NCBI RefSeq assembly: GCF_006345805.1
Contig: NC_043002.1
Span: 44,206,001-44,270,000 of the forward strand
DNA from: Octopus sinensis
Lineage: Eukaryota
DNA: 64,000 bases
Direction: 5' to 3'
The notes beneath the pieces are model-generated. The model saw only the letters and a list, made by a program, of their open reading frames with translations, made no database searches and was not told the DNA's origin. Both the position numbers and the translations under genes were made by a program. Positions 9,462 to 48,192 of the stretch are shown piece by piece (within the stretch, counting starts at the first letter, position 1; the number at the start of each line of letters is the position of its first letter).

Positions 9462-9553
9462 GCATATATATATATGTATATATATTTATGTATATCTATG
9501 CATAAGTGTATATATATGTGTATATATTTATGTATATATTATGTATATATATA

Positions 9554-9594
<41 letters not shown>

Positions 9595-9702
9595 TAGATA
9601 GATAAAATTTACTTGGAAGAGGATGCGTAGCGTTCAATCATATAATAATATAAATAATATATATACATGCATATATACAAACGTATATATATATATAAAC
9701 AT

Positions 9703-10177: not shown

Positions 10178-10185
<8 letters not shown>
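9703..10185. repeat. fold-back element (about 220 bp imperfect inverted arms)
   Basis: Opposite-strand ORFs 9609-9917(-) and 9918-10160(+) give near-identical peptides. Flanked by (TA)n. Confidence 0.8.
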
Positions 10186-10222
<37 letters not shown>

Positions 10223-10302
10223 TAATAATAAATATTAGGGAATAAATCCAAACTTACAGGGAAAAATCAGATTTAGGATTGAATCCAATTTTATAGTAAA
10301 AT

Positions 10303-10690
10303 ATTATATTATATTAAATTAGAGATAAAACCACTATTAGGCAAATCATACAATGAAAAACTTAAGCCAATACATAAGATTATTTAATTTATATTATTTA
10401 AATATATAGCAAAATTATTTAAAAAATATAATTAATATAACACTACGATCATTTCATTGATTAAACCTCGCCAAGTTAAATATTTAAACCGCCTGATGAA
10501 TGACTGTAACTCGAAAATTTAAAGAAATTAACAGCCATGAAACGATCGTAGTGTTATATTACTTATATTTTTTAATAATTTTGCTATATATTTAAATAAT
10601 ATAAATTAAATAATCTTATGTATTGGCTTAAGTTTTTCATTGTATGATTTGCCTAATAGTGGTTTTATCTCTAATTTAATATAATATTAT
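10303..10690. repeat. fold-back element (about 155 bp near-perfect arms) with a hammerhead motif at the centre
   Basis: Arms 10303-10457 and 10537-10690 are reverse complements. Confidence 0.85.
10486..10557 (+). ncRNA. minimal type I hammerhead ribozyme-like motif with weak stem I
   Basis: CTGATGA 10493-9; stem II 10500-7/10531-8 (7 of 8 pairs); GAAA 10539-42; AC-GATC-GT stem III; GUA triplet ending 10550. Confidence 0.55.
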
Positions 10691-15880: not shown

Positions 15881-17513
15881 CAGTTGCGGCCAAAATGTTC
15901 AGAACGGCATTGTTTTCGTCAGAAAAGTAGATATATCTTTTTATCAAAGTTGTTTTATATTCTATAATTATCACAGACAATAAATACAATATTATTTGTT
16001 ATTGCCTGAGATTTTCCTGTAATTTGAGAGGATAATACAAAAGTTATGGATGATTTAGTGATTTACTGCAAAACCCACGGCGGCCAAAATGATCAGAACG
16101 GTTGCTTTTACTCCATGTTTTAGTATATTTAACCGGCGAACTCTAATGTTTTGAATTTGTTTACGTGACGGTTCGTTTACTAAACATTAGTAAGAATATT
16201 TGCAGTGTACTTTGTTAATATAATGCCACTTACTTCGTAACCAATTCGACAGCAGATTATTAAGCTTCGAAGGAAGGATAATTTAAGTATTGGATCTATT
16301 GCAAAGATTGTTAGCAAGTCAAAAAGTGTTGTACACGGTATTCTTAATGTCTACGATGATTGTGGTTTGTGTGAAGCAAGAAAGTTTACTGGTAGGCCAA
16401 GAAAAACGACCAAGAGAGAAGATCGTGCTATGGTAAAGTTGGTTAAAAAGGACAGATTTAAAACTGCTAGTGCTGTTTTTCGGAAAATGACATTGTATTG
16501 AAGAAAACTTTATCTCGAAAAACTGTGTCTCGTCCTTTAGTTGAACATGACCAACAAGCAAGAGCACCTGCAGTGAAGCCACTGATCAGCTCCAAGAATA
16601 AAAAGTGTCGTCTTACCTTTGCAACCGAACATGTGTTGTGGTCTCAAGAAAAATGGCAAACGGTGCATTTCAGTGATGAATCTAAGTCTATGTTATTTGG
16701 CTCAGATGGGAAAAGGTACGTTCGTCGAAAAGCAGGAGAAAACTTATCACCTAAATGCCTTAAGACTAGTGTTAAATTCGGTGGAGGAAGTGTCATGGTT
16801 TGTGGTGGGTGATATCCTGAAATGTTGTGGGCCCTTTGCTGCGATTACATGGAAAGATAAATGCAGGAGTTTATAAACAACTTGTAAAAGATCATGTCTT
16901 GCCTGTGCTGAGAAATTCAACTAAGCGACCACCCATACTCATGCAGGACAATGCCCCATGTCACAAGGCTAAGGTGGTCATGAACTTCCTAAAGGCTGAA
17001 AAGGTTATTGATATGGATTGGCCTGCTCAAAGCCCATATCTCAATCCTATTGAAAATGTGTGGAATATTCTAGGAGAACGTTCGAAAGCCAGAAATCCTA
17101 AAACAACTGAGCAATTATGGAATGCCCTTCAGGAAGAATGGAATAAGATCACCCAGCAAGAAATTGAAAATTTAATTTCCTCATGCAGTCGAAGATGTCA
17201 GAGTGTGATTGAAGCTAAAGGGCTTCAAACTAAATATTAAATAATTCCAGTATTCTCTGTCATTTTTGATTATTTTGTTATTTTTTCAACCGTTCTGAAC
17301 ATTTTGGCCGCCATGGGTTTTGCAGTAAATCACTAAATCATCCATAACTTTTGTATTATCCTCTCAAATTACACCAAAATCTCAGACAATACCAATTATA
17401 TTGTATTTATTTATCGTCTGTGAAAATTATAGAATATAAAACAACTTTGATAAAAACTTATACCTACTTTTCTGACGAAAACAATGCCGTTCTGAAAATT
17501 TTGGCCGCAACTG
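15881..17513 (+). mobile_element. Tc1-like (DD34E) IR/DR transposon, copy 1, defective
   Basis: About 220 bp TIRs starting CAGTTGCGGCCAAAATG with inner and outer direct repeats; TA flanks; FSDESK, MQDNAPCH and NPIENVW with 34-residue D-E spacing. Confidence 0.95.
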
Positions 17514-32968: not shown

Positions 32969-33063
32969 GGTTTCATAAAATGGACCCTTCTAATCCTCAA
33001 GCGGCTCCAAAGTTGGTTGGAGGCGGGGGTGGCAAAGTTGGCCAACTACACATTTCTTGGGAA
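32969..33063 (+). CDS. CNTN: contactin-like exon (start of the next FN3 repeat)
   Basis: TTTTTTAG|GG TTT...GAA|GTAAGT. Encodes (R)FHKMDPSNPQAAPKLVGGGGGKVGQLHISWE. GGGGGKVG is characteristic of invertebrate contactins. Confidence 0.93.
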
Positions 33064-33445
33064 GTAAGTAAATTCTTTCTCTTCTCATAATTTGGATATT
33101 AGTAAATATTGCACCGAAAGAATAAAAGAAAACAAATTAGGTTTTGAAACTGTGCATTTCTTTCATAAAAAAAAGAGTCAATATCAGTAATATTACAGAA
33201 ATAGTCATACTTTGAAGTTTTCGAGTTGTTATTTAACAGAAAAAACAACTCCCAAACATTATGGTTGAGATGGTGTATTCGCTGTCAGGTCACTGCATTT
33301 TTCATTGGTGAAATATTTTCTATTGTTCCCTCAGCCATCTGGGTGAAGTTTCATACACAGAGAACATGTAGAAATTTGTTGTATATGTCTATACATTTAG
33401 CTATGTTTGTTTTCGCAAGTGTATGTACATATATATTTGTTTGTG

Positions 33446-33493
<48 letters not shown>

Positions 33494-33819
33494 TACGTAC
33501 GCGTGTGTGTCTGAGTCTGTATATATATACTTTACCAAGAACGTTCTCTTTATTATTCTATAAATATATATATGAAAGAAGGTTTGAAAATGCAATTTTA
33601 AAAGATGTTTATTTACTTGGCCGGTTTCACTTTATTAGAAAAAGATTGTCAAAAGTAACATGTAAAAGCTTGGTTGTGTTAGGTACTGGTTGTCACAAAG
33701 TATTACAATATATAAATACATTCTCTGATAATAAGAACATGTTAAGAACAGTTTACAAGGGAAAATATGAAAAAGTTTAAGAAGTTCATTAAAATATTTA
33801 ACGCTTACAAGATACAATA

Positions 33820-34110
33820 ATATCAAATATGACTTAAATGTTCAGAGCATTCAATAATATAAAGATGTGGATCATCTTGTTTAAATGCGCAAAATTCAAT
33901 AGTGTTAAAAGTGGCGATAAGAAATGTGGGCCTTCAAATTTTCGATCATTCTGAGTCAAGACTCAATAATATCACATATGATTTAAATGTTCACAACATT
34001 CAATAATATAAAAAATGTGGATCATCTTGTTTAAATGCACAAAATTCAATATTGTTAGAAGTAATCGAGAAGAAATGTGGATCACCAAAGGTTCGGTCAT
34101 ACTGAATTAA
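33820..34110. repeat. diverged tandem repeat of about 150 bp (2 copies)
   Basis: TATGACTTAAATGTTC...GTGGATCATCTTGTTTAAATGC occurs twice. Confidence 0.75.
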
Positions 34111-34774
34111 GAGGGAGAAAAACAATGGAGAAATGAAGATAGTAAAATGTGTTTTGTTACAGTTACTGTGATTCTTTTTCTATCGTGTGCAGGGAATTTC
34201 GCTTGTAACGGCGTTTTTTTGGAATCCAGTATATTTATAATTTTTTTCCGTGAACGGATCTGATTTTTGATTCGTTAAAGTACTGATGACGTCTTATTTT
34301 TCCGATGGTCACGTTTGTCGTTCTGCCTGGTTGACATCCATTTGGAGAACGTTCATCAGCCGTTACAGTTGGCTGATTCTTTTAAAGGGTCATTTTGTTG
34401 TATTTTTTTAAGTTTGGTTTCGATCGGAGGCAAATTTCATTGTTCTAGAGTTAGGGGATGCCAGCAACTGGTGTCTAGTGTTATTGTATGGTGATTTGGA
34501 GTTGCAGTTTCGAAAGCTGCGTGAAAGACGGTTACTAAAGTTTTTTTAATTACGTCTGTTGTATCTGGTTGTTTTTTGGGGAAATTGCAATACACCCTTC
34601 ACCACAAGACAAAACTCCCCCACTCAAAGCTACAGAAACCCTTCAAGTCTGAGACGTAACGTCCTCGTGAATCACTTTTTCGGACGGGACTATAAGGTGG
34701 GAGTAGATTATAGGGATAATTGAACCATTTAGGTTCAATTTTTGTGGCGTTATGATCACACGATCCTTAACATT

Positions 34775-35072
34775 TGGCCTCCTAATTCCTCAGATGTCAA
34801 TCTATTGGACTATTACTATTATATCAAGCGTTGTTGAGAGAGGTCAATGAACACGCCCATAACCCAAAGATTCTTTGAAAGCTGCAATAGTCAGAGTAAT
34901 GCACAAAATGAACCAGGACCACTTGATCCGAGCATGTAGATGATTTAGATCTCGTATAGAAGGTGGGTTTACTGAATAACATTATAGAGAAGGTTTATTT
35001 TTATCCTCATGGCATTTTTTTATCATTAAAGTTATTATCTGTTAAATATCCTCAAATACCTTATGCACTCCG
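34775..35072 (+). pseudogene. 3' remnant of a maT/DD37D-like transposon
   Basis: IWPPNSSDVNLLDYY...KDSLKAAIVRVM...HLIRAC...FRSRIE. Confidence 0.6.
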
Positions 35073-35117
35073 GTTATATACATACATACATACATACATA
35101 CATACATACATACATAC

Positions 35118-35155
<38 letters not shown>

Positions 35156-35156
35156 T

Positions 35157-35192
<36 letters not shown>

Positions 35193-36810
35193 CAGTTGCG
35201 GCCAAAATGTTCAGAACGGCATTGTTTTCGTCAGAAAAGTAGGTATAAGTTTTTATTAAAGTTGTTTTATATTCTATAATTTTCACAGACAATAAATACA
35301 ATATTATTGGTTATTGCCTGAGATTTTCGTTTAATTTGAGAGGATAATACAAAAGTTATGGATGATTTAGTGCTTTACTAAACCCACGGCGGCCAAAATG
35401 ATCAAAACGGTTGCTTTTACTCCATGTTTTAGTATATTTAACCGTCGAACTCTAATGTTTTGAATTTGTTTACGTGACAGTTCGTTTACCAAACATTAGT
35501 AAGAATATCTGCAGTGTACTTTGTTAATATAATGCCACTTACTCCGTTACCAATTCGTCAGCAGATTATTAAGCTTCGAATGAAGGATAATTTATGTATT
35601 AGGTCTATTGCAAAGATCGTTAACAAGTCAAAAAGTATTGTTCAGGGTATTCCTAAGGTCTACGATGATTGTGGTTCGTGTGAAGCAAGAAAGTCTACTG
35701 GTAGGCCAAGAAAAACGACCAAGAGAGAAAATCGTGCTCTGGTAAAATTGGTTAAAAAGGACAGATTTAAAACTGCTGCTGCTGTGTTTCGGGAAATGAG
35801 CATTGTACTGAAGAAAACTTTATCTCGAAAAACTGTGTCTCGTTCTTTAGTTGAACATGACCTACAAACAAGAGCACCTGCAGTGAAGCCACTGATTAGC
35901 TCCAAGAATAAAAAGTGTCGTTGCAACCGAACATGTGTTGTGGTCTCAAGAAAAATGGCAAACGGTGCATTTCAGTGATGAATCTAAGTCTATGTTATTT
36001 GGCTCAGATGGAAAAAGGTACGTTCGTCGAAAAGCAGGAGAAAACTTATCACCTAAATGCCTTAAGACTAGTGTTAAATTCGGTGGAGGAAGTGTCATGG
36101 TTTGTGGTGGGTGATATCCTGAAATGTTGTGGGCCCTTTGCTGCGATTACATGGAAAGATAAATGCAGGAGTTTATAAACAACTTGTAAAAGATCATGTC
36201 TTGCCTGTGCTGAGAAATTCAACTAAGCGACCACCCATATTCATGCAGGACAATGCCCCATGTCACAAGTCTAAGGTGGTCATGAACTTCCTCAAGGCTG
36301 AAAAGGTTATTGTTATGGATTGGCCAGCTCAAAGCCCAGACCTCAATCCTATTGAAAATGTGTGGAATATTCTAGGAGAACGTTTGAAAGCTAGAAATCC
36401 TAAAACAACCGAGCAGTTATGGAATGCTCTTCAGGAAGAATGGAATAAGATCACCCAGCAAGAAATTGAAATTTTAATTTCCCCATGCAGTCGAAAATGT
36501 CAAACCTTGATTGAAGCTAAAGGGCTTCACACTAAATATGAAATAATTCCAGCATTCTCTGTCACTTTTTGATTATTTTGTTATTTTTTCAACCGTTCTG
36601 ATCATTTTGGCCACCATGGGTTTTGCAGTAAATCACTAGATCATCCATAACTTTTGTATTATCTACTCAAATTACACCAAAATCTCAGACAATACCAATT
36701 ATATCGTATTTATTGTCTGAAAATTATAAAATATAAAACAACTTTGATAAAAACTTATACCTACTTTTCTGACAAAAACAATGCCGTTCCGAACATTTTG
36801 GCCGCAACTG
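35193..36810 (+). mobile_element. Tc1-like (DD34E) IR/DR transposon, copy 2, defective
   Basis: Same TIRs and transposase as 15881-17513; TA flanks within (TA)n. Confidence 0.95.
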
Positions 36811-36859
36811 TATATATATATGTACATATATATATATATGTACATATATATATATATGT

Positions 36860-37133
36860 GGTCGAGCACTCCGTCGGTTGCGACGACAAGGGTCCCAGCT
36901 GATACGATCAACGGAACGGCTGCTCGTGAAATTAACGTGCAAGTGGCTGAGCACTCCACAAACACGTGTACACAAACACGTGTACATTTGAAATACAGGT
37001 ACTACTCATTTTTGCCAGCTGAGTGGACTGGAGCAACGTGAAATAAAGCGTCTAGTTCAAGGAAACAACGCGCCGCCGGGAATTGAACTAACGATCATGA
37101 GCCGAATGCTCCTAACCACTAAGCCACGCGCCT
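36860..37133 (-). mobile_element. tRNA-like SINE family C
   Basis: Minus strand GGCGCGTGGCTTAGTGGTTAGG...AGTTCAATTCCC head. A second copy lies at 54355-54640(+). Confidence 0.8.
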
Positions 37134-37151
37134 TTACATATATATGTATAT

Positions 37152-37188
<37 letters not shown>

Positions 37189-37200
37189 CTATATATGTAT

Positions 37201-37235
<35 letters not shown>

Positions 37236-37237
37236 AT

Positions 37238-37268
<31 letters not shown>

Positions 37269-37301
37269 GTATATGTATATATATATATGTATATATATAT
37301 G

Positions 37302-37338
<37 letters not shown>

Positions 37339-37450
37339 GTATATGTTATATATATATATATATATATAATATATATATATGTATATATATGTATATGTAT
37401 ATATATATGTATATGTATATATATATATATTATATATATATATATATATA

Positions 37451-40400
37451 GTGCCTCTGTTGAACTGGACGGACGTGTTTTTGTTTCTCTCTCCCAAGTC
37501 AGTAGCAAGCTACACAGCTTCAAAACTTAACTGACCTTACATATATATATATTTGTAACCACGTATTTGCCTACAAACCCGTAAGTACGTTTTTATTTAA
37601 CTACAAATTGTTATATACACTTGTTTTTCTTTTAATATCTTCAAACAACCAAATAATCAAAAACTCACACCCTTAAGAGAGAAAATTTATATATATATAC
37701 ACTTCTTTAACTCACAAGAAAGAATATATATATATCAAAAATCAAAAGAAAAACAAACATGACTAACTTGCAGGCCTGCAACAGACGAAATTGGTCTGAT
37801 AATGAAATTGATGTTTTAATAAACACTTGGTTCTCTCTTTCCCAAACAGAAAATTTAAATGTTTTATGTTTGAATGAGATTGCCGAAAAAACATCACAAA
37901 TAATCAACACGCGATCCGTCAAACAGATTCGTAGCAAACTGAAGCATATCGAAGCCTCTTTAAAACTAACAAAAAGCCATTTTGAAAAACTTCTTTATAT
38001 TTTCACTCTTCAAGAACAGCAACAGCTAGAAAATCAACAACAGCCACAACAACAACAACAACAGAATGAGCCACTCCTAGTTCCCAGCACAATAGCTGAC
38101 CCTAACATCGGTCAAGCACAACAACAACAACAACAGCCACAGCAACAAGAACAACAACAGCCACTCCTCAACTCTAGCATACTAGATGATTCACTAAATG
38201 CCAGTATCTTTTCACCGCTCTCATGGCAACCACCACAATTATCATCATCACCACCGCTGCCACCATCGTCTTCTATCACCCAAAATACCAACAAAAAACC
38301 AAATAAGAAACCACTGCTCTCTTCCCCCACATCACCACCTCAATACTACTGCAGTAACAAAAACTTAAAGAAACATATGAAGCAGAATGCGCCCCCCACG
38401 GCACAAACAAGAAACCCCAAAATATGCCGTTATTCACTGCGTCAGAGACTCTGCACAAATAGTGACCTCATCTTCACACATCTACCTAGCACTAGACGCA
38501 CTACCGGCCAAGGCCAAAGCACGCATCCCACAATAACATCAACACCACCAAATAGTAAATCGAAATTCAAAACACACACAACTCGGAGTCCTAAAATCTG
38601 CCGGTATTCCCAACGTGAGAGAATATGTCTGCTGAGTGACTGTCCCTTCACTCATCTTCCAGGGACCCGACGCACAAACAGAAACGGGGCTTCAAGCCAA
38701 CACACAAACCTGAATAAAAATAAAAATAAAAACACACCATGCTGCAGTAATGCTGGTCCAGTCTTTTCAGGAAGACACAAAAACAACAACAACAAAAGTG
38801 GAAACTACAACCCTATCCAACAGTGCAACCACACCTCCAGCCAAAAACTGCTCCCTAAGCAGGAAAATTCTTTTTTAGCCATGTTGAACATGGCAAAAGA
38901 GATACACAAAAATATTCTAGCCATCACTCAACACCATCCTATGCTATTACCCCAGTGCACCAATTCCCCACATTGCTGCCACTAACACACACAAAAAATC
39001 CAAGCCCCCTGCAACAGTCAAAACCAGCCACTACACTAACCTCCACATTTCTACTCAATGCACAAGGTGTCAGCCCTTCCATCAATGCACAAAAATGGAA
39101 GGTCCAATTCATTGAAGACTGGGTTGGTAACCATCCACACCACATCCCTTTCTTCATTCTCACTGAGACCCACCTTGACAACTCCCACTTGGAAGCCGAA
39201 GTGAGAGTGAAGAATTTCACAACCATCCGCGCGGATCGTATCGGCAGAAGGAAGGGTGGAACTGCCATTTTCCTGCATGATTGGTTTACGGCAGATGGAA
39301 ATAGTATATTCTCCAACGACTACTGTGAATCAGTCACCGTGCACAACAAAGCCAATGACCTGACAGTAATTGGGCTCTATAGGCCGCCCCAAACACCCAT
39401 ACTATGCTTTAAAGAATGCCTCAACAGCATTAAGTGCTTTATTCAACAGTGCCATTCTAGCAACCTACTCATGATGGAAGACTTCAATCTACCCTGTGTT
39501 GACTGGACTACAAACTGTTTGAAACCAAGCACTCCTGCCTCAACCGCTGACAAAGAAGCAGCAGAGTCACTTTTCGACTTTACGAATGAGTTTTTCTTGT
39601 CCCAACTTGTCCTTGCACCAACAACACATCAGAAGAACATTTTGGACCTAGTGTTTAGTAGCCACACTAACACTATACATAACGTTACAGTGGAAAAAAC
39701 CCTTCTTTCAGACCATGACATGGTTCTCTGTAACATGAAATTCCACCAGCCGAAAGCTAATCCTAGTGACCTCCCTCCAGCCCACCCATTTGATAACATG
39801 GATCTCCATAATGCCAACTGGGATGCAATCAGGAACGAGCTATCACATGTTGACTGGTCCTTTACACATACACACATCTCCCCCAACCATAAAACATCTT
39901 GGCAGATCTTTGTAGACACCGTCACAGACATATGTGCGAAACACTCCCCACCAAGACCTGTGAACAAAAAGTGCAGAATCCCCCAAAACAGAAAAACTAT
40001 TATCAGAAAAATAAAAAGAACAAACAAAAAAATTAACAAACTAAAGTACTGCCAACAGCAACACACATATTCGACGGCTATCGCACTGCTTGAATCCATA
40101 AAATATAACCTCCAACAATGCATGAAGACCCTCATCAATAACCAAAGATCAGCTGAGGAGAAGTGGGCCATTGAAAAAATCAAACTCAACCCCAAAGTGT
40201 TCTTTTCATTTGCGAGGAAGCGCAGGGTCACTGTCTCCATTGTTGGCCCTCTAATTGATGAAACTGGCACTCTCCAAGATAATGCCAAATCCATGGCCGA
40301 GATACTGCAGAAACAATACTGCTCTGTTTTCAGCAATCCTGATATGGCCGATCTGGGCTGTATCAGTGATGTCAACCCCCAACACACTATATCGGACATA

Positions 40401-42073
40401 ACGTTTAGTGCCCCTGATGTCTTAGCGGCGATAAACGAAATAAAACACAATTCAGCAGTAGGCCCGATAGGTTCCCTGCTTGTGTCCTGAAGGTGTGTCG
40501 ACACCAACTTGCATCTCCCCTTGCTAATCTGTGGAGAAACTCACTGGATGCTGGCTATATTCCAAAAAACCTTCTGTCCCAGTCTGTTGTCCCAGTTTTC
40601 AAAAAGGGAAACAAGTCCCTTGCAGTGAATTACCGTCCGATCTCACTCACCTCTCATATCATCAAGGTATTTGAGAGGGTGGTGAGATCTCGAATAACGC
40701 AATTTCTGGAAAGCAACAGACGGCTGATCTCTAACCAACATGGGTTCCGTAATGGAAGGGACTGCCTAACGCAGCTCCTGCATCACTTTGATGACATTTT
40801 GAGAACTTTGGGAGAGGGCTCCAACACCGATGTCATCTACCTTGATTTCAGTAAGGCCTTCGACAGGGTTGATCACAAGATCCTATTGAAAAAACTATCC
40901 AACATTGGTGTCTCTGGAAAGTTACTGAAATGGATCAAGTGTTTCCTGACAGACAGATCTCAACATGTTGTAGTTGAAGGGGTAAAATCAAGCCCAGCCA
41001 AAGTCAGTAGTGGCGTTCCGCAAGGCACTGTGCTGGGCCCACTTCTTTTCATCATCTACATTAATGACATTAATGACATCATCAAGCACAGCAACATAAA
41101 AATCTTTGCAGATGATTCCAAGCTACAGAAGGTCATAAATGAGGCGAGTGACCGGACATGCCTTCAGTCAGATCTACTGGCTGTTATCCAATGAGCAGAA
41201 AAAAACAATATGCTGCTGAACGAGGATAAATTTGAGTTAATCCACTTTGGAAAAGAGGATGCCCTGAAACTCCCATACTCCCTTCCTTCAGGTGAAACTC
41301 TCATGGCATCCAACAACATCAGAGATTTGGGAGTAATTGTGGACAACAACATAAGCTGGGCCACTCATATAAACACCAAAGTTGACATGGCCCGCAGAAT
41401 GTGTTCCTGGATTCTCAGAACTTTCCAGTCGAGAGATATCCACACCATTATCCTTCTCTTCTCCACTTATGCCCGACCCCACCTTGAATACTGTTGTCCA
41501 CTGTGGTCTCCCCACACAAAACAAAGTATCATAAAAGTTGAAGCACCTGAAAGGGCAATCACAAAAAAGATAGATGGCATGACAGGCCTCGACTATTGGG
41601 GTCGACTAGAAAAGCTAAAACTTTATTCTCTCCAACGTCGTCGTGAGCGCTACATCATCTGCATGATGTGGAAAATATTCCATCAGCATTGCCCAAATGA
41701 TGTTGGCATCACCTTTAAGGTACATCCAAGGCTTGGGCCCCGTGCCATCCGCCCAAAACAAAAATCGCACTCTCATCTCATAACAACAATACGGCACAAT
41801 TATTTCACCTCAATTGGCCCCGCTCTCTTTAACATTACACCAAAACACATTAAAACAGAAACTGACCCTATAGGGTTCAAGAAGTCTTTGGACAGATTCC
41901 TTCAAGAAATCCCGGATAAACCCCCTACACCCGGATATGTCTCTGTAAACAATAACTCTCTACTTGAGTGGGCCATAGTGCCCAAATTCTGACTTGAAAG
42001 ACTTCACCAGGTGGTGCTATTAAGTTAGACATGGCCTGGGCCAATAATGGCTGAAACCTATCAAAGTATCAAA

Positions 42074-42075
<2 letters not shown>
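37451..42075 (+). mobile_element. near full-length CR1-clade LINE (ORF1 + APE-RT ORF2)
   Basis: ORF1 37759-38985 is open. ORF2 38955-41992 has ILTETHL, YRPP, EDFN, LDLVF, SDH, PQGTVLGPLLF and FADD, with one frameshift near 40465 and a TGA at 41192-4. The 3' tail of 8-mer repeats (TATCAAAG)2 is typical of CR1. Both ends lie in (TA)n. Confidence 0.93.
37759..38985 (+). CDS. LINE ORF1 protein (Myb/SANT-like N-terminus, poly-Q, two CCCH-like fingers)
   Basis: RRNWSDNEIDVLINTW; Q/P-rich tract; CRYSQRERICLLSDCPFTH (C-x8-C-x4-C-x3-H) and a degenerate twin. Confidence 0.75.
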   Translation: MTNLQACNRRNWSDNEIDVLINTWFSLSQTENLNVLCLNEIAEKTSQIINTRSVKQIRSKLKHIEASLKLTKSHFEKLLYIFTLQEQQQLENQQQPQQQQQQNEPLLVPSTIADPNIGQAQQQQQQPQQQEQQQPLLNSSILDDSLNASIFSPLSWQPPQLSSSPPLPPSSSITQNTNKKPNKKPLLSSPTSPPQYYCSNKNLKKHMKQNAPPTAQTRNPKICRYSLRQRLCTNSDLIFTHLPSTRRTTGQGQSTHPTITSTPPNSKSKFKTHTTRSPKICRYSQRERICLLSDCPFTHLPGTRRTNRNGASSQHTNLNKNKNKNTPCCSNAGPVFSGRHKNNNNKSGNYNPIQQCNHTSSQKLLPKQENSFLAMLNMAKEIHKNILAITQHHPMLLPQCTNSPHCCH

Positions 42076-42164
<89 letters not shown>

Positions 42165-42189
42165 ATATTTTATATAATATATATATATA

Positions 42190-42286
<97 letters not shown>

Positions 42287-42422
42287 TTATATATATATTT
42301 ATATATATATATTTATATATATTTATATATAGTTATATATATATATTTATATATATTTATATATATATATATATTTATATATATATTATATATATATATA
42401 TTTATATATGTATATATATATA

Positions 42423-42481
<59 letters not shown>

Positions 42482-42485
<4 letters not shown>

Positions 42486-42912
42486 GTGAGTGGGTGAAGA
42501 AATCTTGGGATGATGTTAGTCCTGAAATCATTGTGAAGGCTTTTAAGAAGTGTGGCATTAGCAATGCCCTTGATGGCACAGAAGATGATGCATTATTTGA
42601 AGACAGTGATTTCAGCAGTAGTGATGAAGATGTTCCTTGTTTTGAAGATGATGAAGACTTTTCTGGTGTAGAAGATGATGAAGAGTTTTCTGGTTAAAAA
42701 GATGATTAAAGATGATTACTATTGTAATTTGTATGCCTTCCTTTTGTATGCTTGCTTTTATACAGCAATGTTTTCTGCTTTTGTAATGTGCTGCTAGACT
42801 GCTCTCAACAATATATGCTTAAATACACTTAAAACCTTTTTTCCTGAATTTGACCTGCTGAAATAAGGGTGAGTCTAATATGCCAGTGCGTCTAATATGC
42901 CGTCAAATACGG
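42482..42912 (+). mobile_element. 3' end of a pogo-family (POGK/Passer-like) DNA transposon
   Basis: [33 protein letters not shown] plus an acidic tail; terminal ...GTCAAATACGG-TA TIR. Confidence 0.85.
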
Positions 42913-43289
42913 TACATCGTTTATGTGCACTCATAAATAATACCTAACCTACTTGAAAGCTTAATCTCAGAAACAAAACACAAGTATTCTCAGTCTCATG
43001 GGACATTCTTCACTCATGTAAAGATTCCATTTTAAACTTTACCACTTTATGGAATTTTTTTCATTCTTTATATAAGTGCTTATTGAAAACTGCAATCATC
43101 ATATACCTTATTTTTCATACTTTGGAATTTGGTGCTAGTCATATGAATAACGCTAACTGTGGAATAAATGGTTTTCAATTTATATAAGGAACACTACTGA
43201 AACTTCCAGCATTTGAACTTCTTATATTGTTGCAAGATAATATACTCCAAACGAAATCACTTTAAACATGAAACATTAAGAAGTATTAT

Positions 43290-44680
43290 TTGATTCTCTA
43301 TATTGTTTCTGCTCTTTACAATTTGCAATAATGTTTGTTTAAGCCCCACAACAATAGACACCCCGTCCTTGATACTGAACTTTGGTTAGAAACTGTGAAC
43401 AATAGAGTGCAGTTCCTCAACTCCTATTACATGAAACCTATAGCTTCAAAATATGTTTTTCACAAGAACTCAGCTTTGTCACACAACATGAAAATTAACA
43501 TACTGATAGTAGATTTAGCTAGGATAATGAACAACGTGTCCCTACTGTGCAAACCCTATGAAACGAAAAAACACGTACAGAACTTCATGCACCGTATGCA
43601 ATTCTCTGGATATGATCAGAAAGATAGGGTTCGAGTATACGGGTGAGGGGAAAGCTAGAAAGAAATTAGCTAACATTATATGCAATGATACCAGTGGTAC
43701 CTGCCCTAAATATTGAAACAAAGACTGGAATAGGATACAAAGAACTTGTAACAAAGGAAACAAGGTGAACACGTGGTATAAAACTGACAGGCCACAGCCC
43801 ATAGAGAACTAACCCGTAGATTTAGGAAACCTCTGAATGAGACCAAACTCAACATTAAGATTGTTGAAAAGCCAGGGAAATCCGTCAGATCACAACTATG
43901 TACGACGTACCACTTTGAGAATACCATATGCACCAATGATAACTGCATGATATGTAGGATTAGCCCTGGAATTAACTGTAGAACTAGGAATGTAGTTTCC
44001 AGCATAAGATGCATAGAAGGTGCTTGTGAAGACATGAACATCACATACACAGGGGAGATATCTAGGATGAACCAATCTAACTTAAAATCCTTATTGTATT
44101 TTAAGTTAGATTGGTTCATCCTCTCCATCTCTTTCCCTTATGACAAGAGCAAATGATTTTGTAACATTTGCAACTCTGAACTCTTCCATATTCTCTTCTC
44201 TAAGAATCACCTTGTTAACACACTTATAGAGTGATCTTACAAATGTAAGCACCTTTAGCTCATATAAGTGATTTTTACCAGTCTGTATAGTTTGAACATT
44301 TAGTTCACCTTGCACTTTACTTCAGTAGAGGAATCTACTTCTAAGCCTTTGAACATTTTTTCAACCAATATATCCCTCTATATTTGTTCTCTAATTATTA
44401 TTTCTTTACCCCTTCTCTTCCAAGGGTCTGCCTTTGAGCCAGATCTACTAACGGTTTCTTAAAAAAAATACTTAATAGCGTTCTGTTTATCATTTATGCA
44501 GTCATCAAAATTGTTATAATGTATTTTTGTTGAGATAGGTTCTCTTTCTTTCCTGATGAGAAGATTACATTATTTTACACCGTTTATTCCTTTGGAATAT
44601 AACCAATGTTGTCTTCGAAACATGTCGAAAGTAAAAGAATTTGAATAACACCTTCGTTCAACTCCATTTATTTACATATA
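43290..44680 (+). mobile_element. rearranged PLE fragment: RT thumb/GIY-YIG, inverted segment and pLTR with hammerhead
   Basis: HPVLD, YYMKPIAS, FSGY, CRTRNVV and YTGEISR; 25 bp hairpin at 44064-44122; hammerhead at 44548-44631; then (TA)n. Confidence 0.75.
44548..44631 (+). ncRNA. minimal type I hammerhead ribozyme with intact core
   Basis: Stem I CTTTC(44548-52)/GAAAG(44627-31); CTGATGA 44553-9; stem II GAAGATTACATT/AATGTTGTCTTC (11 of 12 pairs); GAAA 44617-20; palindromic ACATGT stem III; GUC triplet with predicted cut after 44626. Confidence 0.8.
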
Positions 44681-44772
44681 TATGTATATATATATATATA
44701 TAAACACCAGCGAAAATAATTAATTTTATTTTATCGCATTTTGAATTTGTTTATATATATATATAATATATA

Positions 44773-44804
<32 letters not shown>

Positions 44805-46544
44805 GAATGAAAAATCGAGCGTCTAAAAAGCAAAACATAGTACAAGACTTCAAGGCCTTTGAGACTTCAAGGCTCAGAACTTTTCATACGCCCCTCCTAT
44901 ATATACTGACACACACACATACACATATATATGCGCGCGTGCGTGTGTTTGTGAATGTCTGTGTGTATGTGTGCGTAGATTGATGGTTAGATAGATGTGT
45001 GATATCACACATCTCACCTTCCATTAGTAAAGCATAAAAAAAACATTTACAAAATCCAGAAACTCAAGCTGTTATAAATAGAAGCTAAGTTAAGCTCGTG
45101 AGAAAAAGACACGCTGGAGACTGTTGTTCAACGTATATAAAAATACGAAAATATAAACAAAAAGAAAACCGCCAAGAGCTATTCTTTTGCTAGTACTTAT
45201 AAATTTTATGTTTGGAGTTGAAACTTAAAAACTGCGTCTATTTCTATTTAAAACAACTTTATGTTTCTATACCAAATAAATAATGTTGAATATAAACAAA
45301 ATATTTAATTTTATTTGTTAACTGTATGGTACAAGCTGGCTTGGCATTTATCCGTTGGTCATTCTGAATATGTTTACTAAAATATTGATATAGAACCCGA
45401 AACTATGAACTCGGGAGTGTTAGAGATGAATCCCAATTAACAACACGAAGTAACTTTTTTAGAGATGAAAAACTTCCAAAATTTATTGCATGTATGGTTG
45501 TTCAAGTTCAAATGAAATTTAAAGGAATTTATATTTCACATTATCATCTTACACATCCTAATATATTGAGAAAACATTGTTTCGATTCGTCTAACAATAG
45601 AATATATAAATGTTGAAGGGATATTTTTCGGGGTTCATAAATACGCAAAAATAAAGTCTAGGTGTATGTTGAGGTCAGAAGTTTTTACCACATATATTCC
45701 CTGATTCCGGATCAATGAAATACTTATTACGGATAAAATACGATAAAAAGGAATTTTCGCATTTCATTGATCTAGAGACTAGCGATGTCATTTAAGATTA
45801 CATTGAAAATAATATATTACATTTCATTTGTTTGTTTGTTTTTTAAGAATTTCTGCGGCGTCGCACTTCCGTGACGTGAGTACAAACATAATAGCACATC
45901 TTTTGGAAGTCATTTTCTGTCATAGTATCAGAAGTTTTGTACGTTTTGTTTCTTTATTTTCCATTTATTTGTAAATTTGATTTATAAGGTATTTTTTTTT
46001 TTGTATTTTGTCCTTTTATATACGACCATTCTTCCTTATAAGTTTGTGTTCAGTCTATTTCAATTATTTATAATTCTATATCTGACTTTGACGTTAGTGT
46101 TATTAATCGATTTCCCGTCAGCAGATTTGACATAGTACATATTTACTAACTCCAATCTCATATCAGTTCCTTTAGTACACCAGTATCACACCTTTGGTAT
46201 TTCTAGCGCTTTATCATCTAATGTTTACAACTTGAGGTGGTCTAGACGAGAGAAGAACACACGTACATATCTTCCCATAGAATTTGTCTCCAACTTCACT
46301 TTTATGTAGGATGCTGCCTATAGATTGTTTGCGTCAGGCAGAAAGGGGGTGGGGAAAAGAGGTCCTTTTCGAATATCTTTTGTTAACATAGTAATATACA
46401 ATGGGTAGTTTTAGAATAGATTAGATTTAATTTTTCCCTCTTTTGGCAGTAAATGCAAAATTGTTTGTCAGGAACTGCATTTAATATAGGCATATGTACA
46501 TTACTGGCAATGCCTACTCGTGGTACACATGTCTGGATTCCATG

Positions 46545-46710
46545 TGATGGCATGTGTGTTTACATACTCGTAACTTAGCGGTTTAGCCCTAAGAGACCAA
46601 TAAAATAAGTATTAGGATTAGAAAGAATAAGTCTTGGGGTCGATTTTTTCGACTAAAACCCTTTATGGTGGTGCTCCAGCATGGCTGCAGTCAAATGACT
46701 GAAAGACGTA
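46545..46710 (+). mobile_element. SINE family B 3' tail
   Basis: GTGTTTAC...CGTAACTTAGCGG...GGTGCTCCAGCATGGCTGCAGTCAAATGACTGAAA. Confidence 0.7.
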
Positions 46711-46783
46711 AAACAATTTTAAAAATACAAGAATATATTAAACAATCTGTCACGTAACATGAATAAAATTTCTGTAATATGTA

Positions 46784-48040
46784 CAGGGTGTTCAAAAAGC
46801 CTCTCCGCAGTAAGTATTTTATTGCAAAATAAATATTTATAAGATGGTATAGGACTACAAAAGAATATATTAGACTTTACAAGACTTAAAAAAAACTTGA
46901 AAGTGTCGGCTTTCATTTTCAATGCATAAGTTGACTCTTCTACACATGTCCTGAAATACATCTTGGAGAGTTTGACGCAGTATGGATCGTGTGAAGGTTA
47001 CGATTGCGTCTTCTAGCTCATTAATGGTTTTCGGGCGATTCTTGTACACTGATCCTTTACGTGCTCCCAAGAAAAAAAGTCTGGCGGTGTTAAATCAAGT
47101 GATCTTGGTGGCCAAAGTCCCTTCGAAATAATCAGTTCACTTAAAAGCTCTTGAAGTAGCACCATGGTAATGCGTGAAGTATGTGCTGTAGCTCCATCTT
47201 GCTGAAAGTATGCATTAATATTTTCACTTTCAGTGAGTTGGCCTACAAATGGATAGACAATATTCGAGCAATATATTTCGGTGTTGATGGTGTCTTCAAA
47301 AAATATCAGTCCCACAATACACTTTCTCGAAATTGCTATCCATACTCCAACTTTTTCGGGATGCAAAGGTTGCTCATGCGTCGCGTGTGGATTCTCAGTG
47401 CTCCATAACCTTGTGTTTTGCGAATTTATGTGCCCCGACAGATGAAACCAAGCCTCATTGGTGTAAAATACCTATCCAATCCAGTACTTCTATGCCTTTT
47501 TCGGCAACAAAGTTTTGGAACAAATGACAATAATGAAGCCTTTTAGCATGATCTGTAGTCTTCAATTCTTGAATGGCCAGTACTTTGTACGGAAAGAAAT
47601 TCAATTTCTTTTTTACTGCCATGTAAGCACTTCCTAGGCTGATATCCGTTTCCTGTGACAGTTTGCGTACGGACGGTGACAGGCTTATTGGAAATATTGG
47701 AGAGTGTTTCGTCTGAAAGAACAGTAGGACTACCACTTCTTTCTGCGTCTTCCACTGAGCCTATGTTTCTAAATTTTCTAATCAAATCGCGCACAGTGAC
47801 ACGTATTTGGAAAAGTTTCACTGAACTTCTATTTCACAGTATGTGTGTATTTGTTCCCAGCTCGAAACACCCATTCAACTAAAAACGTACGTTCTTCAAT
47901 GGTTAGCATGTCGACCCGCTGAAGGGTACACAATGACTGAGGGACAATAGCAGACACCCGGCTGCCCACGCAGTGATAGCCCAGTTACGCTTGCGCAGGA
48001 TGAAAAATATTCACTGCGGAGAGACATTTTGAACACGTTG
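46784..48040 (-). mobile_element. Tc1/mariner-superfamily transposon (rosa-like motifs, DD38D spacing), full length, defective
   Basis: TIRs CAGGGTGTTCAAAAAGCCTCTCCGCAGT / ACTGCGGAGAGACATTTTGAACACGTTG with TA TSDs. ATG 47909 (MLTIEERTFLVEWVF) to stop 46870. FQQDGATAH...WPPRSLDLTPPDFF. Confidence 0.9.
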
Positions 48041-48102
48041 TATAAGCAGAACAAAAAGGTAAATTTTCTATTCCGCAATGACAAAGAATTTTTCTTTTTC
48101 AG

Positions 48103-48192
48103 GCTCTCTTACCCACTGAACAAGGTGGCAAAGGAATAGGCTACAATGTGTATTGGCGACGAACGAGTGACAAATATCTTCGATGGAAAAAG
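48103..48192 (+). CDS. CNTN: contactin-like exon (FN3 middle)
   Basis: TTTCTTTTTCAG|GCT...AAG|GTAAGT. Encodes ALLPTEQGGKGIGYNVYWRRTSDKYLRWKK. Phase 0/0. Confidence 0.92.

What the first reader, a model, noticed from the sequence alone, without database searches (positions are those of the whole stretch)
44548..44631. Apparently intact hammerhead ribozyme on the sense strand of a contactin intron
Seen: every catalytic-core nucleotide is present (CUGAUGA, GAAA, GUC), with a perfect 5 bp stem I, an 11/12 bp stem II and a palindromic ACAUGU stem III too short to close a loop. It is on the + strand, so it is part of the contactin pre-mRNA (intron 33064-48102). Known: PLEs carry minimal type I hammerheads with palindromic stem III that cleave mainly as dimers, and an intronic self-cleaving ribozyme is known in mammalian CPEB3. 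Inference: this PLE-donated ribozyme could cut nascent transcripts of a neural adhesion gene, in cis or by pairing in trans with other genomic copies, and so affect splicing or output.
Basis: partly seen in the sequence, partly recalled or inferred. Interest (0 to 1): 0.8.

Follow-up and report, generated by a model that had tools for sequence, protein, structure and literature searches.

The report
Retrotransposon hammerhead motif in contactin intron
The hammerhead ribozyme motif is really there, but it is one of more than a thousand copies left by a Penelope-like retrotransposon in this octopus genome, and nothing suggests it does anything for or to the contactin gene.

Summary
Window 44548-44631 (+) holds a complete type I hammerhead: CUGAUGA, GAAA, GUC, a 5-bp helix I, an 11/12-bp helix II, and a helix III of one A-U pair over a palindromic CAUG. 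It lies in the sense strand of a contactin-like intron (33064-48102).

It is not a gene feature. It is the 3'-UTR hammerhead of a 5'-truncated, mutated copy (44097-44683) of a Penelope-like element. [quoted passage not shown] It looks Hydra-clade-like. The genome appears to be Octopus sinensis.

The motif's 5' half occurs 1,145 times in the genome. About two thirds of sampled copies still look intact, so an intact copy here is expected. This copy has lost 2 nt of the family's helix III palindrome (CAUAUG to CAUG), which weakens the dimer such ribozymes need. No second copy lies within the 64-kb window. The active monomer fold is not predicted.

Best reading: a passenger retrotransposon ribozyme with negligible effect on contactin. 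It is a new member of a known kind, and interest is low.

The parts
44548..44631 (+). Type I hammerhead ribozyme motif. Helix I is 44548-44552 paired with 44627-44631. CUGAUGA is 44553-44559. Helix II is 44560-44571 paired with 44605-44616, with an apical hairpin at 44572-44604. GAAA is 44617-44620. The helix III palindrome ACAUGU is 44620-44625. C17 is at 44626, and the predicted cut is at 44626/44627.
   Evidence: Read directly. Unique in the window. Expected by chance 0.003 times per window. Helices I and II form in the MFE fold, and helix III does not. No Rfam match.
44097..44683 (+). 5'-truncated copy of a Penelope-like retroelement. It aligns to positions 194-795 of a 945-nt working consensus. 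It differs by 3.6% substitutions and 5 indels, including a 14-nt deletion and a premature stop in the endonuclease remnant.
44098..44271 (+). Degenerate remnant of the C-terminal GIY-YIG endonuclease ORF of the element (FKLDWFILSISFPYDK...). It is broken by a stop at 44154-44156 and by a 14-nt deletion.
   Evidence: The consensus ORF of 126 aa scores E=0.009 against Pfam GIY-YIG, which is below threshold. It aligns to the C-terminus of homologue P0001 at E=2e-23. Differences are listed.
44272..44547 (+). 3' UTR of the element, upstream of the hammerhead.
44632..44683 (+). Terminal segment of the element (...CUCCAUUUAUUUAC). This is the 'short' type of 3' end and abuts (TA)n. Other copies continue about 170 nt further, to a second ...CAUCCAUUUA end.
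44064..44096 (-). Short inverted duplicate of the copy's own 5' end: 25 nt exact (44064-44088 against 44098-44122), and 33 nt against longer copies. This is the small version of the head-to-head inverted 5' piece typical of PLE insertions.
   Evidence: Larger inverted pieces abut the 5' ends of copies L002, L003, L005, L008, L011, L016, L017 and L024.
44684..44702 (.). (TA)n microsatellite abutting the 3' end. It is the likely insertion target, and TA tracts resume at about 44756.
   Evidence: Many other copies also end in (TA)n.
32969..33063 (+). Upstream exon of the contactin-like gene (start of the FN2 domain). The donor GT is at 33064.
48103..48192 (+). Downstream exon of the contactin-like gene. 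The acceptor AG ends at 48102, which is 3,476 nt downstream of the predicted cleavage site.

Best explanation
The motif is the hammerhead ribozyme carried in the 3' UTR of a Penelope-like retrotransposon (PLE). [quoted passage not shown] It inserts into (TA)n microsatellites.

A 5'-truncated copy landed in sense orientation in a contactin-like intron. The copy was dead on arrival and has since mutated.

The ribozyme belongs to the element's life cycle (inferred, see below). Where transcripts carry two copies (partial tandems, pseudo-LTRs), the palindromic helix III lets two motifs pair into a double hammerhead. In the family consensus that palindrome is ACAUAUGU, 8 bp. Each motif then cuts after C17.

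In the host pre-mRNA this solitary copy forms helices I and II at most. It cannot close helix III, has no partner in cis, and binds partners in trans far too weakly. It is therefore expected to cleave negligibly and to be spliced out with the intron. It looks intact because the copy is young, not because the host selects for it.

Shown here: the anatomy, the family membership, the copy numbers, the decay pattern and the thermodynamics. Inferred: the dimer mechanism and the low activity, both by analogy with published PLE hammerheads.
For: **High-copy repeat.**
- The 161 nt around the motif match 40 scored loci at 93-96% identity, out of 2,221 first-look candidates.
- The exact 19-mer CTTTCCTGATGAGAAGATT occurs 1,145 times, and its reversed control 0 times.
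- The exact 32-mer of the 3' half occurs 319 times.

**PLE-like insertion structure.**
- Copies have variable 5' ends and common 3' ends, and many have inverted partial copies abutting the 5' end.
- Two alternative 3' ends both run into microsatellites.

**Coding content of the element.**
- The consensus upstream of the hammerhead encodes a GIY-YIG-like domain.
- That domain has 17,448 first-look matches in the genome, and it lies at the C-terminus of open frames of up to 787 aa.
- Longer copies carry RT motifs upstream.
- The RT part matches P0001 at E=8e-72 and the EN part at E=2e-23. Both hit the same 635-aa homologue in the order RT then EN.
- Homologues give sub-threshold RVT_1 scores, and one is named a GIY-YIG endonuclease.

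**The hammerhead is conserved in the element's lineage.**
- It is the best-conserved part of the element: 0.040 substitutions per site, against 0.085 and 0.097 in the flanking UTR and 0.054 in the EN ORF.
- Stem positions are 88-100% paired across 57 copies. Variation is A-U to G-U to G-C.
- Two diverged copies show compensatory changes.

**Decay after insertion looks neutral.**
- 16 of 25 copies chosen through the EN ORF keep an intact motif.
- The window copy shows 1 substitution and 1 indel in 84 nt, at 3.6% overall divergence.

**Activity of this copy is unlikely.**
- The dimer is weakened by the 2-nt deletion.
- The CATG variant is rare: 13 exact copies against 319.
- No second family copy lies in the window.
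- Helix III has probability about 0. Helices I and II lose out once +/-150 nt of intron sequence is included.

**Literature.**
- PLE pseudo-LTRs carry minimal hammerheads that appear to work as dimers and have low activity (PMC4209133).
- Hydra-clade PLEs are short, target (TA)n and carry canonical hammerheads near their 3' ends (PMC8557442).
- A helix III of one base pair capped by a palindromic tetraloop gives weak cleavage as a monomer (PMC7229834).
Against: - No biochemical or RNA data were available. Weak co-transcriptional cleavage cannot be excluded, and proteins or chaperones might help in vivo, as PMC4209133 suggests.
- With short flanks, helices I and II are predicted with probability about 0.95. 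A transient near-native fold during transcription is therefore possible.
- RT and GIY-YIG identity rests on sub-threshold Pfam scores, motif reading and homology to unannotated proteins.
- The role of the hammerhead even within PLEs is unsettled. Catalytic mutants did not affect insertion in vitro, and no RNA-seq ends mapped to the cleavage site in Anolis (PMC11167929).
Confidence: 0.85

Rival explanations
1. The copy is catalytically active in the contactin pre-mRNA. It acts either as a monomer helped by cellular factors, or as a dimer paired in trans through helix III with transcripts of other family copies. Cleavage 3.5 kb upstream of the next exon lowers or tunes contactin output, in the manner of the CPEB3 ribozyme.
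For: - All core nucleotides and helices I and II are intact.
- The motif is in sense orientation inside a real intron.
- The local fold is predicted with probability about 0.95 when flanks are short.
- At least 1,145 potential partners exist in the genome.
- The CPEB3 precedent shows that an intronic ribozyme can modulate its host mRNA when its half-life matches the polymerase's transit time to the next exon (PMC10919898).
Against: - Helix III is one base pair over a tetraloop, with probability about 0.
- The 6-bp palindrome gives only -4.6 kcal/mol, and the whole dimer gains -5.9 kcal/mol over two monomers. That corresponds to a Kd from tens of uM to mM, far above plausible intron RNA concentrations (my arithmetic).
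- This copy has lost 2 nt of the family's palindrome.
- There is no partner in cis within 64 kb.
- Helix II has 12 positions before its first internal loop. The loop-loop contacts that make natural hammerheads fast at physiological Mg2+ are therefore not evident.
- Single PLE minimal hammerheads showed no detectable cleavage in vitro (PMC4209133).
- There is no sign of host-level selection.
Confidence: 0.05
2. Within the element, the hammerhead fold is conserved for something other than self-cleavage. It might serve as a structural mark near the 3' end that the element's RT/EN recognises, or that positions the start of reverse transcription. On this reading the motif in the intron is an inert RNA structure even in principle.
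For: - In the Anolis PLE, catalytic mutants of the hammerhead did not change insertion activity, and no RNA-seq reads ended at the cleavage site (PMC11167929).
- Here the motif lies 58 nt upstream of the short 3' end and about 225 nt upstream of the long one, close to where reverse transcription must start.
- Most copies have no same-strand partner nearby. In the chromosome C1 listing, only 2 same-strand pairs closer than 3 kb appear among 70 copies (my count).
Against: - The catalytic-core nucleotides themselves, not just the helices, are the most conserved positions. They are unchanged in 53-57 of 57 copies.
- The helix III palindrome stays palindromic in both length variants. This fits a dimer-cleavage function.
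- Fungal and protist PLE hammerheads cleave well as monomers (PMC4209133).
Confidence: 0.2
3. The locus is a unit of a non-LTR 'retrozyme', that is, a short tandem repeat with one hammerhead per unit that is expressed as circular RNA.
For: - Type I hammerheads in animals often belong to retrozymes, which derive from PLE pseudo-LTRs (PMC7229834; bioRxiv 10.64898/2026.07.22.740005).
- A few family copies lie in same-strand pairs 100-1,040 bp apart.
Against: - This locus is a single copy with a coding-region remnant, a 5' truncation and a microsatellite end. It is not a tandem array.
- Only one hammerhead is present, so no unit can be excised.
Confidence: 0.02
4. The motif is a chance match to the hammerhead descriptor.
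For: - No Rfam hammerhead model matches.
- The genome is AT-rich and 2.7 Gb long, so about 140 chance matches of this quality would be expected genome-wide. This is extrapolated.
Against: - Only 0.003 matches are expected per window.
- The motif is the consensus of a family of more than 1,000 copies. In that family it is the most conserved segment and sits where PLE hammerheads sit.
Confidence: 0.01

Closest known systems
Minimal and variant type I hammerheads of Penelope-like elements (Cervera & de la Pena 2014, PMC4209133)
   Same: - Open helix I of 4-5 bp.
- Helix II longer than usual.
- Very short, palindromic helix III, implying action as a dimer.
- Location in the repeated terminal region of an RT plus GIY-YIG retroelement.
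- Thousands of dispersed genomic copies.
   Different: - Helix II here is much longer: 12 positions, an internal loop, and an 8-bp apical hairpin, 57 nt in all.
[quoted passage not shown]
- Helix III keeps a 4-6-nt palindromic loop instead of being absent.
Hydra-clade PLEs (Craig et al. 2021, PMC8557442)
   Same: - C-terminal GIY-YIG domain with CxxC before the conserved E and CxH after the conserved N.
- Insertion into (TA)n.
- Hammerhead near the 3' end.
- Head-to-head inverted copies.
- The clade is reported from Mollusca.
- The closest homologue, P0001, has the CxCX5C linker.
   Different: - The octopus copies examined have an Asn-rich low-complexity linker instead of CxCX5C.
- The N-terminal RT motifs (RWK, DKT) and the element's total length could not be checked.
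Amphibian satellite/retrozyme hammerhead HHR_Amex1 and the newt satellite 2 hammerhead (PMC7229834)
   Same: - Helix III is a single base pair capped by a palindromic tetraloop.
- Weak as a monomer and efficient only as a dimer.
   Different: - Those motifs keep the loop 1-loop 2 tertiary contacts.
- They sit in 330-350-bp tandem repeats that supply the partner in cis.
- This copy is solitary and lacks evident tertiary contacts.
CPEB3 HDV-like intronic ribozyme of mammals (PMC10919898)
   Same: - A self-cleaving motif on the sense strand of an intron of a neuronal gene.
- It lies upstream of the next exon, 3.5 kb here against 9.9 kb in CPEB3.
   Different: - CPEB3 is a different ribozyme class.
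- It is single-copy, conserved across mammals and active as a monomer, with a half-life of 2-3 min.
- The present motif is a repeat copy with no evidence of conservation or activity.
Rfam Hammerhead_1 (RF00163)
   Same: Same core, same type I topology.
   Different: - The 45-position model does not reach E<=10 on this motif, presumably because of the 57-nt helix II.
- It does find other, compact hammerheads in the same genome: 8 over the cut-off among 74 scored.

Membership tests
Hammerhead ribozyme, type I | Conserved core: C3 U4 G5 A6 N7 G8 A9, then G12 A13 A14 | tested here: met
   CUGAUGA is at 44553-44559 and GAA at 44617-44619. Each core position is unchanged in 53-57 of 57 family copies.
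Hammerhead ribozyme, type I | A15.1-U16.1 pair and a cleavable H17 (not G) | tested here: met
   A is at 44620, U at 44625 and C17 at 44626.
Hammerhead ribozyme, type I | Helix II closed, starting with G10.1-C11.1. Helix I open, formed by the 5' and 3' ends. | tested here: met
   G44560 pairs with C44616. Helix II has 11 of 12 positions paired. Helix I is CUUUC/GAAAG. Both helices are 88-100% paired across copies.
Hammerhead ribozyme, type I | A stable helix III, or a palindromic helix III that can form between two copies | tested here: met
   As a monomer the helix is not stable: the closing pair has probability about 0. The palindrome ACAUGU can form a 6-bp intermolecular helix of -4.6 kcal/mol, and the consensus ACAUAUGU one of -7.0 kcal/mol. 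The consensus dimer's MFE structure is the double hammerhead.
Hammerhead ribozyme, type I | Match to the curated covariance model (Rfam RF00163 or other hammerhead models) | tested here: not met
   No hit at gathering score or at E<=10 on 601 nt. The locus is not among the genome-wide RF00163 matches.
Hammerhead ribozyme, type I | Self-cleavage giving 5'-OH and 2',3'-cyclic phosphate ends | not testable with these tools
   Needs in vitro transcription or end-mapping in RNA.
Hammerhead ribozyme, type I | Tertiary contacts between helix I and helix II loops (needed for fast cleavage at physiological Mg2+) | tested here: inconclusive
   Helix II runs 12 positions before its first internal loop, and helix I has no capping loop. 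No canonical contact geometry is visible, but no 3D modelling was done.
Penelope-like element (EN+) | Reverse transcriptase ORF | tested here: inconclusive
   - RT motifs are read by eye in longer copies: FIQFDISSFY, MGSTGSAQISDLVG, LYRDDCL, FLDITL.
- 73 homologues were found, the best at E=8e-72.
- Two homologues give sub-threshold RVT_1 scores of E=5.5e-6 and 4e-3.
- The octopus ORF itself gives no Pfam hit.
Penelope-like element (EN+) | GIY-YIG endonuclease fused C-terminally to the RT | tested here: met
   - The spacing pattern IY...YFYIG...R...H...E...N is present.
- Pfam GIY-YIG scores E=0.009, below threshold.
- The domain aligns to residues 505-623 of the 635-aa homologue P0001 at E=2e-23, and the N-terminal part of P0001 aligns to the RT ORF.
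- It lies at the C-terminus of open frames of up to 787 aa.
- One homologue is named GIY-YIG endonuclease by its source.
Penelope-like element (EN+) | Insertion anatomy: variable 5' truncation, inverted 5'-truncated copy head-to-head, partial tandems, alternative 3' ends ('tail') | tested here: met
   -.
- Head-to-head (-)(+) pairs appear.
- The two 3' ends are about 170 nt apart, which is longer than the published 30-40-bp tail (PMC11167929).
Penelope-like element (EN+) | Hammerhead motif in the repeated terminal region | tested here: met
   The hammerhead lies about 280 nt downstream of the EN stop codon and 58 or about 225 nt from the 3' end.
Hydra clade of PLEs | CxCX5C linker upstream of the EN domain | tested here: not met
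   Octopus copies have an Asn-rich linker with no CxC. The closest homologue P0001 has CNCRNPLEC.
Hydra clade of PLEs | [quoted passage not shown] | tested here: met
   FCNICNSE...NTLIERSYKCKH in the consensus ORF. This was read by eye against the description in PMC8557442.
Hydra clade of PLEs | Insertion into (TA)n | tested here: met
   The window copy and many others end in (TA)n or other microsatellites.
Hydra clade of PLEs | RT motifs RWK and DKT, length under 3 kb, placement in an RT phylogeny | not tested
   No full-length copy could be fetched.
Non-LTR retrozyme | Tandem repeats of about 150-450 bp, each with one hammerhead, expressed as circRNA | tested here: not met
   There is a single copy in the window. 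The unit carries a coding remnant and a 5' truncation.
Host-exapted intronic ribozyme (CPEB3 or HH9/HH10 type) | Single-copy locus conserved at the orthologous position across species | tested here: not met
   At least 1,145 copies exist. The copy's decay is indistinguishable from neutral. Conservation at the orthologous position could not be tested, because no related cephalopod genome was reachable.

The most novel reading that the evidence does not exclude
Sense-strand intronic copies of this octopus PLE hammerhead, including the contactin copy, retain enough activity in neurons to nick nascent pre-mRNAs. They might be helped by chaperones or by pairing with abundant family transcripts. A retrotransposon family would then impose a distributed, ribozyme-based drag on the expression of long neural genes.
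Probability: 0.04. Interest if true: 0.6.

Novelty: new member of a known kind. Interest (0 to 1): 0.15.

Why it matters
As it stands, it matters little. Hammerheads in Penelope-like elements have been known since 2014. Cephalopod genomes are already reported to hold hundreds of Rfam hammerhead hits (PMC6962438). An intronic copy is the expected fate of an abundant retroelement.

Two modest points of value remain:
- This octopus family has a 57-nt helix II and escapes the Rfam models, so covariance-model censuses undercount PLE hammerheads in cephalopods.
- The family has about 1,100 or more copies, of which roughly two thirds are intact. With a gene annotation, it would make a good natural test set. 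One could ask whether intact sense-strand ribozymes are depleted from introns.

Tried and rejected
- **Rfam.** Scans at gathering score and at E<=10 found no hammerhead family at the locus. A genome-wide RF00163 search finds other hammerheads but not this family.
- **ORF just upstream (43788-44156).** I first took it for the element's endonuclease. It mostly belongs to a different repeat family (43340-44067) that merely abuts the insertion, and Pfam is silent on it.
- **The 935-945-bp units.** I first read these as the whole, non-autonomous element. Searching with the EN ORF showed that longer copies carry an RT upstream.
- **Diverged copy next to L002.** I looked there for the autonomous partner. 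It is again a truncated copy with an inverted piece.
- **Pfam and PDB searches of the RT fragment** gave nothing useful. BLASTP against the other PLE in the window (7.2-9.6 kb) gave only E=0.011 around the YxDD motif.
- **Supplementary files of PMC8557442** are not held.
- **Custom covariance model** was considered and dropped. The copies are too similar for informative covariation, and the genome search scores only a few dozen candidates.
Full report
**1. The observation**

The sequence at 44548-44631 (+) reads CUUUC-CUGAUGA-[helix II]-GAAA-CAUG-UC-GAAAG. All eleven invariant core nucleotides are canonical.

- Helix I is 5 Watson-Crick pairs.
- Helix II starts with the usual G10.1-C11.1. It has 11 of 12 positions paired, with one U-U mismatch and one U-G wobble, and continues into an apical hairpin. 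Helix II totals 57 nt.
- Helix III is only A15.1-U16.1 closing the palindromic loop CAUG, so ACAUGU is self-complementary.
- The scissile bond would be 44626/44627.

A descriptor scan of both strands finds this motif and no other of comparable quality. Simulated sequences with the window's dinucleotide make-up yield 0.003 such motifs per 64 kb.

RNAfold forms helices I and II in the MFE structure but not helix III. The fold energy is not unusual, with z = -1.75.

Rfam's hammerhead models do not match at the gathering score, or at E<=10 on a 601-nt stretch. The likely reason is that the 45-position model cannot absorb the long helix II.

**2. The gene context**

Exons at 32969-33063 and 48103-48192 (+) have canonical splice sites and join in phase. 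The joined 61-aa peptide matches the FN2 domain of contactins far better than other IgSF adhesion proteins. CNTN6 scores E=3e-10, CNTN2 2e-9, CNTN3, CNTN4 and CNTN5 1e-6 to 1e-5, and L1 0.07.

The motif is therefore in the sense strand of a contactin-like intron. It lies 11.6 kb from the donor and 3.5 kb from the acceptor.

A protein hit on a contig of 207,928,902 bp annotated Octopus sinensis matches the length of contig C2 of this genome. The genome is therefore most likely the Octopus sinensis assembly (2.72 Gb, 13,516 contigs).

**3. What it belongs to**

The 161 nt around the motif are a high-copy repeat. There are 2,221 first-look candidates, and the 40 that were scored are 93-96% identical.

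Comparing the flanks of 29 copies gives this picture:
- Homology in the window runs from about 44098 to about 44683.
- Copies have many different 5' ends but common 3' ends.
- Many have an inverted partial copy abutting the 5' end.
- There are two alternative 3' ends about 170 nt apart, ...CUCCAUUUAUUUACUUAUA and ...CAUCCAUUUA. Each runs into (TA)n or another microsatellite.

A working consensus of the longest copies of that first set encodes a 126-aa ORF on the hammerhead strand. The ORF has the GIY-YIG pattern (...SIYQCKISCGTDVYFYIGASSSQLSKRISNH...CNICNSE...N...CKH). About 280 nt of UTR follow, then the hammerhead. Pfam GIY-YIG scores E=0.009, below threshold.

Searching the genome with that ORF gives 17,448 first-look candidates. 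The domain sits at the C-terminus of open frames of up to 787 aa.

Longer copies carry an upstream ORF with RT motifs: FIQFDISSFY, MGSTGSAQISDLVG, LYRDDCL and FLDITL. A 386-aa stretch of it has 73 homologues. Several give sub-threshold RVT_1 scores, and one is labelled a GIY-YIG endonuclease by its source.

The best homologue, P0001 (635 aa), aligns to the RT ORF over 98% of the query at E=8e-72. Its C-terminus (residues 505-623) aligns to the EN ORF at E=2e-23. This fixes the domain order as RT then EN.

[quoted passage not shown] So are 5' truncation, head-to-head inverted copies and a hammerhead near the 3' end (PMC4209133, PMC8557442).

Three details fit the 'Hydra' clade described by Craig et al. 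(PMC8557442, section 11): CxxC and CxH around the conserved E and N of the EN domain, (TA)n targets, and the CxCX5C linker in P0001. That clade is reported from Mollusca and always carries canonical hammerheads. The octopus copies themselves have an Asn-rich linker instead of CxCX5C, and I could not retrieve a full-length copy. I therefore call the element Hydra-like, not a proven member.

**4. The window copy**

It aligns to consensus positions 194-795, which means it starts inside the EN ORF. It shows 3.6% substitutions and five indels. These include a 14-nt deletion and a new stop codon in the EN remnant, so the copy is dead.

It is preceded by a 25-33-nt inverted duplicate of its own 5' end at 44064-44096. 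It ends in (TA)n.

The sequence immediately upstream (43340-44067) is an unrelated, older repeat family that the insertion abuts.

**5. Is the hammerhead real at the family level?**

Yes. Thirty copies were chosen through the EN ORF, that is, without regard to the hammerhead. In 25 of them the hammerhead region is present.

| Region | Substitutions per site vs consensus |
|---|---|
| Hammerhead | 0.040 |
| Flanking UTR, upstream | 0.085 |
| Flanking UTR, downstream | 0.097 |
| EN ORF | 0.054 |

- Across 57 distinct copies, every core position is unchanged in 53-57 sequences, and stem positions are 88-100% paired.
- The one common polymorphism turns an A-U pair of helix II into G-U. A 3-nt deletion in another subfamily only shortens an internal loop.
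- Two copies about 25% diverged show compensatory changes. In helix II, A-U becomes G-C and U-A becomes A-U. In helix I, U-A becomes C-G. The U-U mismatch position stays a mismatch in one of them (read by eye).
- Covariation is thin because the family is young. The case rests mainly on the fit to the well-defined hammerhead consensus and on the conserved position in a PLE.

**6. Is this copy special?**

No.
- The exact 19-mer spanning helix I, the CUGAUGA box and the start of helix II occurs 1,145 times in the genome. Its reversed control occurs 0 times.
- The exact 32-mer of the 3' half occurs 319 times.
- In the hammerhead-independent sample, 16 of 25 copies (64%) pass the same descriptor as the window copy.
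- The window copy has one substitution and one indel in 84 nt, where about 3 changes would be expected at its divergence. That is not significantly few.

The indel matters. The family consensus for helix III is ACAUAUGU, and the window copy has lost an AU to give ACAUGU. The shorter variant is rare, with 13 exact copies against 319. It has arisen more than once.

**7. How it most likely works, and why not here**

In PLEs the hammerhead lies in the pseudo-LTR. Transcripts of partial tandems therefore carry two copies, and the palindromic helix III lets them form a double hammerhead (PMC4209133).

| Quantity | Consensus | Window variant |
|---|---|---|
| Dimer MFE structure | The double hammerhead, with an 8-bp helix III | A domain-swapped structure instead |
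| Dimer energy relative to two monomers | -7.4 kcal/mol | -5.9 kcal/mol |
| Isolated helix III duplex | -7.0 kcal/mol | -4.6 kcal/mol |
| Approximate bimolecular Kd from the helix III duplex (my arithmetic) | 10 uM | 0.6 mM |

Those Kd values are orders of magnitude above any plausible nuclear concentration of intron RNA, so pairing in trans with other copies is not credible.

Pairing in cis is also out. The consensus finds only this one copy in the 64-kb window.

As a monomer, the A15.1-U16.1 pair has a predicted probability of about 0. Part of the CUGAUGA box pairs with the helix III loop in the MFE structure. Once +/-150 nt of intron is included, helices I and II fall to probabilities of about 0.1.

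The published data agree:
- Single PLE minimal hammerheads showed no detectable cleavage, and dimers only low activity (PMC4209133).
- Amphibian hammerheads with the same helix III (one pair plus a palindromic tetraloop) are weak as monomers, even though they keep the loop-loop contacts that this motif appears to lack (PMC7229834).
- In Anolis no RNA-seq ends map to the PLE hammerhead site (PMC11167929).

The CPEB3 ribozyme affects its host because its 2-3-min half-life matches the polymerase's transit time to the next exon (PMC10919898). Here the exon is only 3.5 kb away, so a comparably fast ribozyme would be needed.

**8. Comparison and verdict**

The motif passes the sequence and structure definition of a type I hammerhead, although not the Rfam model. 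The element passes the architectural definition of an EN+ PLE.

It is not a retrozyme unit, because it is neither tandem nor excisable. It shows none of the marks of a host-exapted ribozyme, because it is neither single-copy nor shown to be conserved.

It is a new member of a known kind: an octopus, Hydra-like PLE hammerhead with an unusually long helix II.

The proposed effect on contactin is possible in principle but unsupported, and by the thermodynamics and the literature unlikely. I put it at about 5%.

**9. Limits**

- No RNA data, no biochemistry and no related cephalopod genome were available.
- RT and GIY-YIG calls are sub-threshold in Pfam and rest on homology and on motifs read by eye.
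- Copy numbers are exact-word counts and therefore lower bounds.
- The consensus used is a working one, built from seven copies.

Noticed in passing
window 10490-10553 (+), within about 10250-10690: A second hammerhead-like motif: CGC-CUGAUGA-AUGaCUGU...ACAGcCAU-GAAA-CGAUCG-UA-GUG, with an 8-nt palindromic helix III (ACGAUCGU). It sits in an inverted-duplicated repeat between (TA)n tracts. The family has at least 1,138 first-look candidates. Many copies are 97-98% identical, and many lie in head-to-head pairs. This looks like a younger, different PLE-type hammerhead family.
   Followed up: partly
window 7225-9600 (+): Frameshifted ORFs of another Penelope-like element (RT motif GRYIDDC, GIY-YIG 'SLYIGQTGRRLDDRFAEH'). 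It is only remotely similar to the family studied here, with BLASTP E=0.011.
   Followed up: partly
window 43340-44067 (+): A separate repeat family of about 730 bp, with at least 1,327 first-look candidates at 80-87% identity. Its copies all end at 44067, directly abutting the hammerhead element. Its ORF has Cys motifs and what looks like the first half of a GIY-YIG domain, but Pfam gives no hit.
   Followed up: partly
window 9700-10180: A near-perfect foldback (long inverted repeat) flanked by (TA)n. It contains a CTGATGA box near its centre and may be another head-to-head PLE insertion.
   Followed up: no
window 37711-41992 (+): Long open frames (424, 543, 258 and 265 aa) of a LINE-like retrotransposon lie in the same contactin intron and on the same strand as the hammerhead. 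They include an RT-like region, and I assigned them by eye. Tc1/mariner-like transposase remnants lie at 3970-4710, 16821-17240, 35478-36572 and 47013-47471 (-).
   Followed up: no
genome G000, e.g. C13:29988995-29989039, C5:60037714-60037760, C5:69975879-69975986: Rfam Hammerhead_1 finds 8 matches over its cut-off among only 74 scored candidates, out of 265,664 from the first look. Most are compact 42-48-nt motifs, and several are about 104-108 nt. The genome therefore holds further hammerhead families unrelated in sequence to the one studied.
   Followed up: no
genome G000, e.g. C2:207487125/207487432 (+,+), C4:10054123/10055161 (-,-), C1:146698765(-)/146698882(+): Family copies occur in same-strand pairs 100-1,040 bp apart, and more often in head-to-head (-)(+) pairs. 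In the chromosome C1 listing I count about 6% of copies in same-strand pairs and about 20% in head-to-head pairs closer than 3 kb. The same-strand pairs are the places where dimeric cleavage in cis could be tested.
   Followed up: partly
loci L059, L061, L064, L069, L077 (upstream of the EN domain): [quoted passage not shown] It often carries frameshifts, and it stands where related elements have a CxCX5C zinc-finger-like motif.
   Followed up: no
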